A DNA stretch of 63,545 nt, filler included, from Octopus bimaculoides (taxonomy: Eukaryota), in the NCBI RefSeq assembly GCF_001194135.2. It is 7 parts of 7 records of this genome, joined end to end, with 100 filler letters (N's around TTAATTAATTAA, not from the genome) between each part and the next. Parts side by side here need not be neighbours in the genome. Positions count along the whole stretch, not along the records: positions 53,330 to 56,745 come from NC_069006.1; 6 more parts are not named here. One strand, given 5' to 3'. Shown piece after piece: positions 53,230 to 56,745 of the stretch; the first letter of the stretch is position 1; the number at the start of each line of letters is the position of its first letter. The notes beneath the pieces were generated by a model. It was not told the DNA's origin and ran no database searches. It saw only the letters and a program-made list of their open reading frames with translations. The position numbers and the translations under genes were made by a program.

Positions 53230-53772
53230 NNNNNNNNNNNNNNNNNNNNNNNNNNNNNNNNNNNNNNNNNNNNTTAATTAATTAANNNNNNNNNNNNNNN
53301 NNNNNNNNNNNNNNNNNNNNNNNNNNNNNATATATATACAATGCTAAGGAGAGTTCAAATAAGTTCAACAATTTATGTAAACATATATTGCGCCATGTGT
53401 CGATGTACATCAGTTTTTAATTATACAAATGTATCAATCATTAAAATATTAAAACATGGTAAAAATCTATGAATACAAAAATATATAAAAATTCAACATA
53501 CAAATACAAATAGACGAATGCGATTAAGTTATAAAATTGTAGATGTATAAAAGTATAGTTGTATTAAGATATACATATTTAGAATTGCAATCGTATTAAA
53601 AGGCGTTGTACAACAGCGTTATACAAATAGAATGGCGTTGTTGAAGATGAATAAAATAAAGTCTTATGGAAAGAGCGAATAACGAAAAATTATAGCGTTG
53701 AGATAAGATTTTTCAGAAAATATGTAATTGATCCAAGAAAATAGGTAATCCTCTTTAGATAAACTGTTGGTA

Positions 53773-53872
53773 ATAGTCTTCTTACGGCCGTTTCAGGAGC
53801 ACAGTAATCCATAGATTTTAAGGGTATTTTCACACCAAAAATTAAATACTGCCTCCTTCATCAGAGAGAGTA
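53773..53872 (-). ncRNA. Type I hammerhead ribozyme motif with long stem II
   Basis: Minus strand reads CTGATGA (53864-53858), AGGAG-GCAGTA...TACTGT-G-CTCCT (stem II), GAAA, C-GGCC-G (palindromic stem III), then TA. Predicted GUA cleavage falls between 53783 and 53782. Stem I is TCT/AGA plus a bulged extension. Confidence 0.8.
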
Positions 53873-54010
53873 TAGAATATTATTCAGGATTCATATTTCG
53901 TACTTTATTTTATTCGCCTTCTCGTAAGGGCATATTTATTTTTAAATAATATTTTGTACAACGCCGTTCTACAACGCCTTTTGATACGATTGTAATTCTA
54001 AATGTCTCTA

Positions 54011-54910
54011 CAGGGTGCGAGGTGTATTTGAGGACAGTTTTGGTATACAATAAAACAACTATATTTCAGCATAAATATCTTTGGATAAACTTTTGTGCAA
54101 TTAGTTTTGATAATGATTTTTTAAGCGAATTATTCTATGAAACCGCCTTCAGCTTCGATGACTGCTTCAATGCGGGACCGAAACCGCTAACATGCTGACA
54201 CTATATGATCCTTATTCATTACAGACATCACCTGGACAATGGCGGCCTATGGTATTATGAGGTATTAATCTCCCTTTCAACAGCGCTCTACACGTAGTAT
54301 CTATGGGGTCCAAATCTGGTGAATTTGGCGGCCACATATTGGGTGTAACATAAGCGTAAAGATTTTCAGACAACCATTCTTGGATGACTAGGGCTTTCTG
54401 GGAAGGTGCTGAGTCTTGTTGAAACACGTATGGCCTTCCATTGCATACTTCATCAATTCAGGGCTTGATAACAGTTTCTAGTATCTCAATGTATCCAGCA
54501 GCATTAATTCTAAGACCCTGTGGAAAAGAGTGGGGAGGCATCACATGACCTTCGCTACTTACCACTCCTAAAACTATCACAGTTGCTGGAAATATCATGT
54601 GCATCACTCTGAGTACTTCAGAAGAATTTGCACACAACCAGCTGTCATTTCTTCTGTTAGACTTTTTTTCGTCGGAGAAAAACCAAATCATGCCTTGTTC
54701 ATGAGGGTTTTTCACTTTGTTAAATAACCGTTTTGAACAGGATGAGACGGTTTTCCTATGTCTTTGCAGACGCCAATTGGCCTTTCCTCATTACATAGGA
54801 CTTGTATCGAATGTCCCGATGTACCACAGTTCTGATAGTACGCTCTGACTCCCGAAGTTCTTTAGCAATGGACCTCATTGAACATGCTGTATAAATTCCG
54901 GTGTCCTTTT
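54011..54910 (-). mobile_element. maT/DD37D-type Tc1-mariner, central and 3' part
   Basis: TA plus CAGGGTG terminus. Reverse translation gives DIRYKSYVMRKGQ, WFFSDEK, FQQDSAP and WPPNSPDL, typical of the maT (Bmmar1-like) group. Confidence 0.85.
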
Positions 54911-54956
54911 AGTGCCTAAGCGTTGTGAATGTATATATGTATGTATATATATATAN

Positions 54957-55788
54957 NNNNNNNNNNNNNNNNNNNNNNNNNNNNNNNNNNNNNNNNNNNN
55001 NNNNNNNNNNNNNNNNNNNNNNNNNNNNNNNNNNNNNNNNNNNNNNNNNNNNNNNNNNNNNNNNNNNNNNNNNNNNNNNNNNNNNNNNNNNNNNNNNNNN
55101 NNNNNNNNNNNNNNNNNNNNNNNNNNNNNNNNNNNNNNNNNNNNNNNNNNNNNNNNNNNNNNNNNNNNNNNNNNNNNNNNNNNNNNNNNNNNNNNNNNNN
55201 NNNNNNNNNNNNNNNNNNNNNNNNNNNNNNNNNNNNNNNNNNNNNNNNNNNNNNNNNNNNNNNNNNNNNNNNNNNNNNNNNNNNNNNNNNNNNNNNNNNN
55301 NNNNNNNNNNNNNNNNNNNNNNNNNNNNNNNNNNNNNNNNNNNNNNNNNNNNNNNNNNNNNNNNNNNNNNNNNNNNNNNNNNNNNNNNNNNNNNNNNNNN
55401 NNNNNNNNNNNNNNNNNNNNNNNNNNNNNNNNNNNNNNNNNNNNNNNNNNNNNNNNNNNNNNNNNNNNNNNNNNNNNNNNNNNNNNNNNNNNNNNNNNNN
55501 NNNNNNNNNNNNNNNNNNNNNNNNNNNNNNNNNNNNNNNNNNNNNNNNNNNNNNNNNNNNNNNNNNNNNNNNNNNNNNNNNNNNNNNNNNNNNNNNNNNN
55601 NNNNNNNNNNNNNNNNNNNNNNNNNNNNNNNNNNNNNNNNNNNNNNNNNNNNNNNNNNNNNNNNNNNNNNNNNNNNNNNNNNNNNNNNNNNNNNNNNNNN
55701 NNNNNNNNNNNNNNNNNNNNNNNNNNNNNNNNNNNNNNNNNNNNNNNNNNNNNNNNNNNNNNNNNNNNNNNNNNNNNNNNNNNNNNNC
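54957..55788. other. Largest assembly gap (N run) in the probable DPH1 upstream intron region
   Basis: The N run is read directly and could hide DPH1 exons. Confidence 0.95.
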
Positions 55789-56194
55789 AACACCACCACC
55801 ACCACTACCACCACCACTACCACCACCACCACTACCACCCACACCACCTATCCACCCACACCACCTATCCACCCGCACCCCACAAGATAAGAAGATAATA
55901 TTAACACAGATTACTCAGTGACTTTATATTAAGTGTGACTTGTTGCCTGGAAACGGTCAGAAGAGCGGCGGGGTGGGACGGAGAGAGGGAAAGGATTTGT
56001 AGGGAGCATGTGACACAATAGCTAACGTAATCCTAGATAGAGTATGTCGGAATAAAAGCCAGGGTGGTCATGACTGGAACACCTCTGATCATGGGTCTGC
56101 GGGATCGGTGCTGAGCAAGGACTAAACAACGACAAGGTCACATTAGAAAATACATTCTTCTCTATTTTCTACGTCTACGACACACTAAACGACA

Positions 56195-56527
56195 GGCGCA
56201 TGGCTCAGTGGTCAGAGCTTCAGGCGTACAATCTTGAGGTTCGGGATTCGATTCCAGGATCAGGTTATGTGCTGTGTTCTTGAGCAAGACACTTTATTTC
56301 ACGTTGCTCCAGTTCACTCAGCTGTAGAAATGAGTTGTGACGTCACTGGTGCCAAGCTGTATCGGCCCCCTTGCTTTTCCCTTGGACAACATCAATGGCG
56401 TGGAAAGAGGAGGTTGGTATGCATGGGACCCGCTGGTCTTCTATAAACAAACTTGCCAGGACTTGTGCCTGGGAAGGTAACTTTCTAGTCTAGGTGCAAT
56501 CCCATGGTCAGTCATGACCAAAGGGAG

Positions 56528-56579
<52 letters not shown>

Positions 56580-56700
56580 GTACACACACACACACACACA
56601 CACGTGTTTGTGGTCTTCTATAAACAACTTTGCCCGGACTTGTGCCATGGACGGTAACTTTCTAAGTGTAATCCCATGGTCATTCATGACCGAAGGAAGT
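56195..56700 (+). mobile_element. CORE-type tRNA SINE with its last ~110 bp tandemly duplicated
   Basis: A box TGGCTCAGTGG and B box GATTCGATTCC, then TGTGTTCTTGAGCAAGACACTT. GGTCTTCTATAAACAA...CCCATGGTCA occurs at about 56435 and 56590. A 5' fragment of the same type lies near 51160-51275. Confidence 0.75.
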
Positions 56701-56714
56701 CTCTCTCTCTCTCC

Positions 56715-56745
<31 letters not shown>

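What the first reader, a model, noticed from the sequence alone, without database searches (positions are those of the whole stretch)
53773..53872. Intact hammerhead ribozyme lying sense inside a probable DPH1 intron
Seen: the complete catalytic core on the minus strand. It has CUGAUGA, an 11-bp stem II (AGGAG-GCAGUA/UACUGU-G-CUCCU) closed by an R-Y pair, GAAA, a palindromic stem III ACGGCCGU and a GUA site. Established: minimal type I hammerheads with palindromic stem III occur in Penelope-like elements and non-LTR retrozymes and often cleave as dimers. Inference: DPH1 is on the same strand and its 5' exons must lie to the right of 52760, so the pre-mRNA probably carries a self-cleaving site about 1 kb upstream of the 69-bp exon. 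That could affect splicing or transcript levels of a translation-fidelity gene.
Basis: partly seen in the sequence, partly recalled or inferred. Interest (0 to 1): 0.75.

Follow-up and report, generated by a model that had tools for sequence, protein, structure and literature searches.

The report
Lone hammerhead motif in transposon debris
The hammerhead-ribozyme motif is really there and is too complete to be chance, but it sits as a single copy inside an old inverted-repeat-flanked repeat, so it looks like an ordinary relic of a ribozyme-carrying retroelement, not a regulator of a host gene.

Summary
The motif is on the minus strand at the stated coordinates. It has CUGAUGA (53864-53858), a 63-nt stem-loop II (53857-53795), GAAA (53794-53791), the palindrome ACGGCCGU (53791-53784) and GUA, which puts cleavage between 53783 and 53782. 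A motif this complete is expected about 0.004 times by chance in a 3-Gb genome.

It is not a canonical hammerhead:
- No Rfam hammerhead model matches it, even at E<=10.
- A model I built from four validated animal retrozyme hammerheads finds only its two halves.
- Pair 10.1-11.1 is A-U instead of the near-universal G-C.
- Helix I has only three contiguous base pairs.
- The piece holds no second copy that could supply a dimer partner.

The motif lies in the unique 239-bp centre of a 441-bp, 31% GC element (53570-54010). Inverted arms of 93 and 109 nt, 85% alike, bound this element, and it abuts a degraded Tc1-like transposon.

My best reading (confidence 0.6) is a decayed solo copy of a Penelope-like-element or retrozyme-type repeat. 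The arms would then be the PLE-typical inverted 5'-truncated partner copy.

The DPH1 intron claim cannot be tested in this piece, and nothing here supports an effect on splicing. I could not retrieve any related copies, so covariation is untested. This is an ordinary finding of low interest.

The parts
53865..53873 (-). Helix I, 5' strand (AUACUCUCU). Only the last three bases (UCU, 53867-53865) pair contiguously with the 3' strand.
   Evidence: Direct reading. Hand-built structure evaluated. Ensemble pairing probability is about 0.03.
53858..53864 (-). Catalytic core box CUGAUGA (C3-A9).
   Evidence: Direct reading. It is the only CTGATGA in the piece on either strand.
53795..53857 (-). Stem-loop II, 63 nt. 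AGGAG/CUCCU plus GCAGUA/UACUGU (one G.U wobble, bulged G at 53800) close an imperfect 37-nt hairpin. Pair 10.1-11.1 is A-U.
   Evidence: Pairing probability is 0.98-0.99 in the unconstrained ensemble.
53791..53794 (-). Core box GAAA (G12, A13, A14, A15.1).
   Evidence: Direct reading.
53784..53791 (-). Helix III: the palindrome ACGGCCGU. In a monomer it gives 2 bp plus a GGCC loop. In a dimer it gives an 8-bp intermolecular helix.
   Evidence: Direct reading. Cofolding two copies forms the 8-bp intermolecular helix: -57.3 against 2 x -23.5 kcal/mol.
53782..53783 (-). Predicted cleavage site: after A17 (53783) and before A1.1 (53782), triplet GUA.
   Evidence: Follows from hammerhead numbering applied to the sequence. 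Not tested experimentally.
53773..53782 (-). Helix I, 3' strand (AGAAGACUAU).
   Evidence: Direct reading. Structure.
53570..53662 (.). Left inverted-repeat arm (93 nt). On the PLE reading it is the 3' part of the minus-strand copy that carries the hammerhead.
   Evidence: the repeat finder pairs I1 and I4. Gapped alignment gives 78/92 identical columns, and 0 of 500 shuffles score as high.
53663..53901 (-). Unique 239-bp centre that holds the hammerhead. Its two halves are not complementary to each other.
   Evidence: Interior halves score no better than shuffles, with 346 of 500 at least as high. GC is 32%.
53902..54010 (.). Right inverted-repeat arm (109 nt). On the PLE reading it is an inverted, more severely 5'-truncated partner copy. 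It ends at the TA into which the Tc1-like element is inserted.
   Evidence: The sequence TA|CAGGGTG at 54009-54017 is a direct reading.
54011..54956 (-). Context only: a degraded Tc1-like DNA transposon. Its transposase frame is broken by frameshifts and stops, and its far end is lost in the assembly gap.
   Evidence: Weak Pfam DDE_3 hit. The composite translation has 427 homologues at E<=1e-10, Tc1-like DDE_3 proteins. The best named one is Octopus bimaculoides XP_014768517.1 at 65% identity.

Best explanation
The motif is a genuine descendant of a type I hammerhead ribozyme. It is carried by a short, AT-rich, non-coding repeat of the Penelope-like-element (PLE) or animal-retrozyme kind. The copy has been sitting in this locus long enough to decay.

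Proposed layout, read on the minus strand:
- A 332-nt 5'-truncated copy (53901 down to 53570) retains the hammerhead about 210 nt from its 3' end.
- An inverted, more truncated 109-nt copy (53902-54010) abuts its 5' end. This would produce the flanking inverted repeat.

Proposed mechanism in the parent element: hammerheads of this build have a short helix I, a long helix II and a palindromic helix III. In tandem transcripts, two ribozymes can pair through the palindrome and cut the RNA.

Here the copy is solitary, so little or no cleavage is expected, and no host function is implied.

Shown: the motif, its improbability by chance, the inverted-repeat architecture, the absence of a partner, and the neighbouring transposon debris.

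Inferred: the retroelement origin, the assignment of the arms to two copies, and low activity.
For: - All 11 invariant core bases plus A15.1-U16.1 and H17 are present.
- A motif this complete is expected 0.004 times per 3 Gb by chance.
- Three hallmarks listed for PLE minimal hammerheads are met: a larger-than-usual helix II, which in D. virilis carries a mid-stem bulge; a short helix I; and palindromic 15.2-16.2 with loop 3 (PMC4209133).
- The helix III octamer ACGGCCGU has the same form as ACGCGCGU in the validated mussel retrozyme and ACACGUGU (with a GUA site) in axolotl Ax353 (PMC7229834 supplement).
- Two copies cofold through the palindrome into an 8-bp helix III.
- The inverted arms are highly significant, and the centre is not palindromic. 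[quoted passage not shown]
- Most PLE-type hammerheads are dispersed single motifs attributed to truncated PLEs (PMC4209133; PMC7761336).
- GC is 31%, and the RNA is highly self-paired with z = -8.8. Both are described for animal retrozymes (PMC7229834).
- The neighbourhood is transposon debris.
Against: - No second copy of the element could be retrieved. Family membership, covariation and any link to an RT/EN-coding PLE are therefore untested.
- No Rfam hammerhead model hits, even at E<=10 on 151 nt.
- A model built from four validated animal hammerheads finds only the two halves, at 4-5 bits each.
- Pair 10.1-11.1 is A-U. G-C is called the most conserved pair after 15.1-16.1 (PMC3088659) and highly conserved in PLE hammerheads (PMC4209133).
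- The unpaired base between A9 and 10.1 that is typical of PLE hammerheads is missing.
- A 63-nt stem-loop II is much longer than the 6-8 bp described for PLE hammerheads.
- No RT or GIY-YIG coding remnant is in the piece.
- The symmetrical arms fit a terminal-inverted-repeat DNA element equally well.
Confidence: 0.6

Rival explanations
1. The 441-bp unit is a non-autonomous DNA transposon (MITE or foldback-like) defined by its roughly 100-nt terminal inverted repeats. The hammerhead is cargo or an accident of its unique core.
For: - The arms sit symmetrically at both ends of the unit (53570-53662 and 53902-54010, 85% identity).
- Each arm contains repeated GCGTTGTACAA-like subrepeats, including the palindrome GTTGTACAAC (D1/I5, plus direct reading). 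These resemble subterminal transposase-binding repeats.
- The size and AT-richness fit a MITE.
Against: - No target-site duplication can be seen, because the right flank is occupied by the Tc1-like insertion.
- The outermost 10 bases of the arms are the least similar part, whereas MITE termini are usually the best conserved.
- I found no hammerhead-MITE association in the literature.
- This reading does not explain a motif expected about 0.004 times per genome by chance.
Confidence: 0.15
2. It is a chance or convergent look-alike: a hairpin in AT-rich repeat DNA that happens to be flanked by CUGAUGA and GAAA and is not derived from any ribozyme.
For: - No covariance model recognises it.
- Pair 10.1-11.1 is non-canonical, and helix I has only three contiguous pairs.
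- The loose descriptor would hit hundreds of times in a large genome.
Against: - The conjunction of the full core, an 11-bp stem II directly abutting both boxes, and an 8-nt palindrome followed by H in exactly the right register is expected 6e-13 per base.
- Even allowing one long hairpin every 2 kb, my estimate stays well below one per genome.
- None of ten database matches to the bare skeleton had helices I and III.
Confidence: 0.1
3. One reading: it is an active, possibly domesticated intronic ribozyme that cuts the host (DPH1) pre-mRNA in cis and so modulates splicing or transcript level.
For: - The core is intact.
- Nearest-neighbour energetics do not exclude the active fold. It costs 6.0 kcal/mol relative to the MFE, against 7.4 for the mussel ribozyme that cleaves at about 0.1 per min (PMC7229834).
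- Conserved intronic hammerheads exist in amniotes (PMC3088659).
Against: - The gene context cannot be tested here.
- Known domesticated intronic hammerheads are canonical, stable monomers conserved across species. This one is embedded in a decaying repeat.
- It has a weak helix I (pairing probability 0.03, against 0.8-0.9 in active coral and mussel ribozymes).
- It has A10.1-U11.1, and stem II is too long for the usual loop-loop contact.
- It has no partner copy.
- Single PLE-type motifs showed no detectable cleavage in vitro (PMC4209133).
Confidence: 0.04

Closest known systems
Minimal type I hammerheads of Penelope-like elements (Cervera & de la Pena 2014, PMC4209133; Lunse et al. 2017, not held in the library)
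   Same: - Type I topology with a complete core.
- Long helix II with a bulge, and short helix I with no defined loop 1.
- Palindromic helix III that allows a dimeric active form.
- Occurs as a dispersed single motif in non-coding DNA.
- The flanking inverted repeat is compatible with the PLE layout of an inverted 5'-truncated partner copy (PMC8557442).
   Different: - A-U instead of G-C at 10.1-11.1.
- No unpaired base between A9 and 10.1.
- Stem-loop II is 63 nt rather than 6-8 bp plus a small loop.
- Helix III is a 2-bp stem with a tetraloop, not absent or 1 bp.
- No RT/EN ORF or pLTR can be shown at this locus.
Type I hammerheads of animal non-LTR retrozymes, e.g. the Mytilus galloprovincialis retrozyme (Cervera & de la Pena 2020, PMC7229834)
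   Same: - Mollusc-type helix III octamer: ACGGCCGU here, ACGCGCGU in mussel.
- Carrier of a few hundred bp with low GC that is highly self-paired.
- The GUA cleavage triplet is also seen in axolotl Ax353.
   Different: - Retrozymes are tandem arrays delimited by ribozyme sites, whereas this is one unit with one ribozyme.
- Retrozyme hammerheads have a 4-bp helix II and a 6-bp helix I.
- A covariance model built from four retrozyme hammerheads does not align the candidate as a whole.
Conserved intronic hammerheads of amniotes (HH9/HH10; RECK and C10orf118 introns; PMC3088659)
   Different: - Those are stable monomeric ribozymes conserved across orders and matched by the Rfam models.
- This one matches no Rfam family and lies inside a decaying repeat.

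Membership tests
Hammerhead ribozyme (any type) | Conserved core: C3 U4 G5 A6 N7 G8 A9, then G12 A13 A14, then the A15.1-U16.1 pair followed by H17 | tested here: met
   CUGAUGA at 53864-53858, GAAA at 53794-53791, U16.1 at 53784 and A17 at 53783.
Hammerhead ribozyme (any type) | Three helices radiating from the core in the correct register | tested here: met
   Helix II is strong (P 0.98-0.99). Helix III is 2 bp plus a tetraloop, or 8 bp in a dimer. Helix I is weak, with 3 contiguous bp and up to 8 across a bulge and a mismatch.
Hammerhead ribozyme (any type) | G10.1-C11.1 closing pair of helix II, the most conserved pair after 15.1-16.1 (PMC3088659) | tested here: not met
   The pair is A-U (53857/53795). 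It keeps a purine at 10.1. I could not quantify its effect on activity.
Hammerhead ribozyme (any type) | Match to a curated covariance model (Rfam Hammerhead_1, _3, _II, HH9, HH10) | tested here: not met
   No hammerhead family is listed at E<=10, either on the whole piece or on 151 nt around the motif. The long insertion in helix II may be the cause.
Hammerhead ribozyme (any type) | [quoted passage not shown] | not testable with these tools
   This needs in vitro transcription or end-mapping. Energetics were uninformative when calibrated on four active ribozymes.
PLE-type minimal hammerhead (PMC4209133) | Larger-than-usual helix II, short helix I (4-5 bp, or 2 bp in D. virilis), and no loop 1 / loop 2 tertiary motif | tested here: met
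   Helix II has 11 bp with one bulge. Helix I has 3 (+2) bp. Stem II is too long for loop 2 to reach helix I.
PLE-type minimal hammerhead (PMC4209133) | Palindromic positions 15.2-16.2 and loop 3, allowing a dimeric helix III | tested here: met
   ACGGCCGU is a perfect palindrome, and the cofold forms 8 intermolecular pairs.
PLE-type minimal hammerhead (PMC4209133) | Unpaired nucleotide between A9 and 10.1 | tested here: not met
   The A after A9 pairs with the U that precedes G12, so no extra base is left over.
PLE-type minimal hammerhead (PMC4209133) | Belongs to a genomic consensus family with covariation, some members lying in the pLTRs of an RT/GIY-YIG element | not testable with these tools
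   No eukaryotic genome collection was available. Pattern scans gave only chance hits, the ORF-based protein search gave nothing, and the exact-product look-up gave nothing.
Penelope-like element insertion | 5'-truncated copy with an adjacent inverted 5'-truncated copy forming flanking inverted repeats (PMC8557442) | tested here: inconclusive
   The arms and unique centre have exactly this geometry. A terminal-inverted-repeat DNA element would look the same, and no RT/EN remnant is present.
Animal non-LTR retrozyme (PMC7229834) | Head-to-tail tandem repeats of 150-450 bp, each with a type I hammerhead | tested here: not met
   The piece holds one hammerhead only, and no tandem repeat of the unit. 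A solo monomer derivative remains possible.
Animal non-LTR retrozyme (PMC7229834) | Low GC (<45-50%) and a highly self-paired RNA | tested here: met
   GC is 31%. The 451-nt RNA has an MFE of -124 kcal/mol, z = -8.8. This is weak evidence, because the whole neighbourhood is AT-rich.
MITE | Terminal inverted repeats, target-site duplication, and many near-identical copies | tested here: inconclusive
   Inverted arms are present. A TSD cannot be assessed, because the right flank is replaced by the Tc1-like element at 54011. Copy number could not be tested.

The most novel reading that the evidence does not exclude
The 441-bp unit might be a mobile element in its own right, defined by its roughly 100-nt inverted arms. 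It could be a DNA-transposon-type MITE or a hairpin-shaped retrozyme relative. In either case it carries a divergent hammerhead (A10.1-U11.1, 63-nt stem-loop II) in its apical domain. That would link hammerheads to a carrier class in which they have not been described. If the unit is also transcribed within a host intron, it would place a cleavable site in a pre-mRNA.
Probability: 0.08. Interest if true: 0.55.

Novelty: new member of a known kind. Interest (0 to 1): 0.2.

Why it matters
If the best reading holds, this is one more dispersed relic of the hammerhead-bearing PLE/retrozyme world. Thousands of such relics per genome are already documented in many animals. Its modest value is as a sample of a divergent variant (A-U at 10.1-11.1, very long helix II) that Rfam's hammerhead covariance models and a model built here both miss, apparently from a cephalopod-like genome for which I found no published hammerhead survey. 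It would matter more only if the family proved to be carried by a new kind of element, or if the site were shown to be cut in a host pre-mRNA. Nothing here supports either.

Tried and rejected
- Rfam at E<=10, on the whole piece and on 151 nt: no hammerhead family. The hits were weak miRNA and snoRNA noise.
- A covariance model (R1) built from the coral, mussel and two axolotl retrozyme hammerheads (sequences from the PMC7229834 supplement), searched with filters off. It matched only the two halves of the motif, at 4.5 and 4.1 bits. Its top hit (56340-56401, 12.9 bits) is a meaningless helix-I-only local match inside the SINE.
- A pattern scan of the metagenome and viral collections for the stem II skeleton: 10 hits, all unrelated.
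- A protein search with the three longest open frames of the element, hoping to catch gene calls on other copies: nothing.
- An exact-product look-up of a Tc1 ORF, to recover the source contig: not on record.
- Supplements of PMC4209133 and PMC8557442 are not held, and Lunse et al. 2017 is not held.
- Thermodynamic argument against monomer activity, abandoned. ViennaRNA also gives helix III a probability of about 0.001 in ribozymes known to be active. The cost of the active fold is 6.0 kcal/mol here, similar to mussel at 7.4. Only the helix I probability differs.
- The idea that the whole unit is one large palindrome centred on CGGCCG, rejected. The interior halves score no better than shuffles.
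- Inverted pair I2 (53551-53574 / 54043-54066), rejected as chance. Its right arm lies inside the Tc1-like element, and similarity beyond the arm ends is not significant, with 50 of 500 shuffles as good.
- I ran no further search on a remembered PLE endonuclease motif. The chance of reaching the right family was small, and the verdict would not change.

Full report
**Scope.** Only 53330-56745 of the window is real sequence. 54957-55787 is an assembly gap.

**The observation.** The minus strand reads 5'-...UAUACUCUCU CUGAUGA AGGAGGCAGUA [37 nt] UACUGUGCUCCU GAAA CGGCCG UA AGAAGACUAUUAC-3'. In hammerhead numbering:
- C3-A9 is 53864-53858.
- Helix II is AGGAG/CUCCU plus GCAGUA/UACUGU, with one G.U wobble and a bulged G at 53800.
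- G12-A15.1 is 53794-53791.
- ACGGCCGU (53791-53784) gives A15.1-U16.1 and C-G closing a GGCC loop.
- A17 is 53783, so cleavage would fall between 53783 and 53782.

Two additions: stem II continues into an imperfect hairpin, so stem-loop II is 63 nt. Helix I has only three contiguous pairs (UCU/AGA), extendable by 2 and then 3 pairs across an A bulge and a C.C mismatch. My descriptor scan finds this site and no other hammerhead-like core on either strand of the piece, even when N7 variation, the U3-A8 covariant and an extra base after A9 are allowed.

**Chance.**
- A loose type I descriptor (stem II >=4, stem III >=2, helix I >=3) hit 6 times in 40 Mb of Markov sequence with the piece's dinucleotide make-up. 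That is negligible for the piece but amounts to hundreds of hits in a large genome, so the loose motif alone proves nothing.
- Also requiring the observed 5+6-bp stem II and an 8-nt Watson-Crick palindrome followed by H in register gives 6e-13 per base, or about 0.004 per 3-Gb genome.
- These criteria were set after the fact, so the figure is optimistic. Even a hundred-fold correction keeps the expectation below one per genome.
- Ten database occurrences of the bare stem II skeleton all lacked helices I and III.

I conclude that the motif descends from a real hammerhead.

**What does not fit a canonical hammerhead.**
- No Rfam hammerhead family matches at E<=10, even when only 151 nt are searched.
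- I built a covariance model from four experimentally validated animal retrozyme hammerheads: coral, mussel and two from axolotl (sequences from the PMC7229834 supplement). It finds only the 5' half (53848-53871, 4.5 bits) and the helix III half (53784-53794, 4.1 bits) separately. The 63-nt stem-loop II is the likely obstacle.
- Pair 10.1-11.1 is A-U. G-C there is called the most conserved pair after 15.1-16.1 (PMC3088659) and highly conserved in PLE hammerheads (PMC4209133).
- The unpaired base between A9 and 10.1 that is typical of PLE hammerheads is absent.

[quoted passage not shown] It says most occur as dispersed single motifs attributed to truncated PLEs. The octamer ACGGCCGU has the same form as ACGCGCGU in the mussel retrozyme ribozyme and ACACGUGU (with a GUA site) in axolotl Ax353. 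Two copies of the candidate cofold through the palindrome into an 8-bp helix III, at -57.3 against 2 x -23.5 kcal/mol.

**Activity.** I first thought the 2-bp helix III ruled out monomer activity. Calibration showed that argument is worthless:
- ViennaRNA also gives helix III a probability of about 0.001 in the coral and mussel ribozymes, which cleave at about 0.8 and 0.1 per min.
- The cost of the active fold is 6.0 kcal/mol for the candidate and 7.4 for mussel (rates from PMC7229834).

What does set the candidate apart:
- Helix I pairing probability is 0.03, against 0.8-0.9 in coral and mussel.
- Pair 10.1-11.1 is A-U.
- Stem II is too long for the loop 1 / loop 2 contact.

Single PLE-type motifs showed no detectable cleavage in vitro, and dimers cleaved only weakly (PMC4209133). 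I therefore expect low activity. This is an inference, not a result.

**Surroundings.**
- The motif lies in the unique 239-bp centre (53663-53901) of a 441-bp unit bounded by inverted arms: 53570-53662 and 53902-54010. The arms share 78/92 identical columns, and 0 of 500 shuffles score as high.
- The two halves of the centre are not complementary, and similarity does not continue beyond the arm ends.
- As RNA, the unit folds into a long hairpin (z = -8.8) with stem-loop II intact.
- GC is 31%.
- The right arm ends at a TA followed by CAGGGTG. This is the terminus of a Tc1-like transposon whose transposase frame on the minus strand is broken by frameshifts and stops and runs into the gap.
- The best named homologue of that transposase is an Octopus bimaculoides protein at 65% identity. 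Together with the SINE further right, this hints at a cephalopod source, but it is no more than a hint.

On that reading, the minus-strand copy runs from 53901 to 53570 and keeps the hammerhead. The 109-nt plus-strand copy is truncated before the hammerhead. In the one PLE studied biochemically, the hammerhead sits at the pLTR-ORF junction and reverse transcription starts about 110 nt further on, so short 5'-truncated copies retain the ribozyme near their 3' end (PMC11167929).

A solo monomer of a retrozyme (self-paired, AT-rich) is a close variant of the same explanation. A terminal-inverted-repeat DNA element (MITE) fits the symmetry equally well, but it leaves the ribozyme unexplained, and the outermost bases of the arms are their least similar part. 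I could not decide between these readings, because no eukaryotic genome collection was available and every route to further copies failed.

- Whether the locus is a DPH1 intron cannot be told from this piece.
- Even if it is, hammerhead-bearing repeats in introns are common. About 44% of Xenopus retrozyme copies overlap introns (bioRxiv 10.64898/2026.07.22.740005).
- The intact core is not evidence of constraint. If the arms were identical at insertion, their 15% divergence implies about 8% change per copy, which leaves roughly a 0.3 chance that 15 core bases escaped change (my calculation).
- No partner copy for dimerisation exists within at least 450 nt on one side and 1,090 nt on the other.

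**Verdict.** This is a real but non-canonical hammerhead-type motif. It is most likely a decaying relic of a PLE/retrozyme-type repeat (confidence 0.6). It counts as a new member of a known kind and is of low interest. The most novel surviving reading is a new inverted-repeat carrier for a divergent hammerhead, at about 8% probability.

Noticed in passing
window 54011-54956 (minus strand): Degraded Tc1-like DNA transposon. Its terminus TA|CAGGGTGCGAGG is at 54009-54022. The transposase frame is broken by frameshifts and stops and ends in ...RIEAVIEAEGGFIE*. The far end is lost in the N gap. The composite translation has 427 homologues at E<=1e-10, and the best named one is Octopus bimaculoides XP_014768517.1 (65% identity).
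   Followed up: partly
window 56195-56400: tRNA-derived SINE-like head: A box TGGCTCAGTGG at 56201-56211 and B-box-like GGTTCGGGATTCGATTCC at 56238-56255. Neither ARAGORN nor Rfam called it a tRNA.
   Followed up: no
window 56434-56745: A unit of about 175 bp is duplicated in tandem at 89-91% identity (56434-56573 and 56611-56745). Each copy ends in a compound (TC)n(CA)n microsatellite. It looks like a SINE tail duplicated together with its microsatellite.
   Followed up: no
window 55788-55880: Low-complexity CCA/CAC-rich array (CACCACCACTAC units) directly after the assembly gap 54957-55787.
   Followed up: no
window 53599-53650 and 53953-53985: Both inverted arms carry two or three copies of a roughly 13-nt subrepeat (GGCGTTGTACAAC / AGCGTTATACAAA / GGCGTTGTTGAAG). 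The core GTTGTACAAC is itself a perfect palindrome. These could be protein-binding sites or just hairpin-forming sequence.
   Followed up: no
window 56340-56401 (+): The top hit of my home-made hammerhead model (12.9 bits, E about 0.01) lies here. It aligns only ACGUCACUGGUG...UGGCGU (helix I plus part of the first box) and skips everything else, so it is a false positive. It is a reminder that this small model's E-values mean little.
   Followed up: yes
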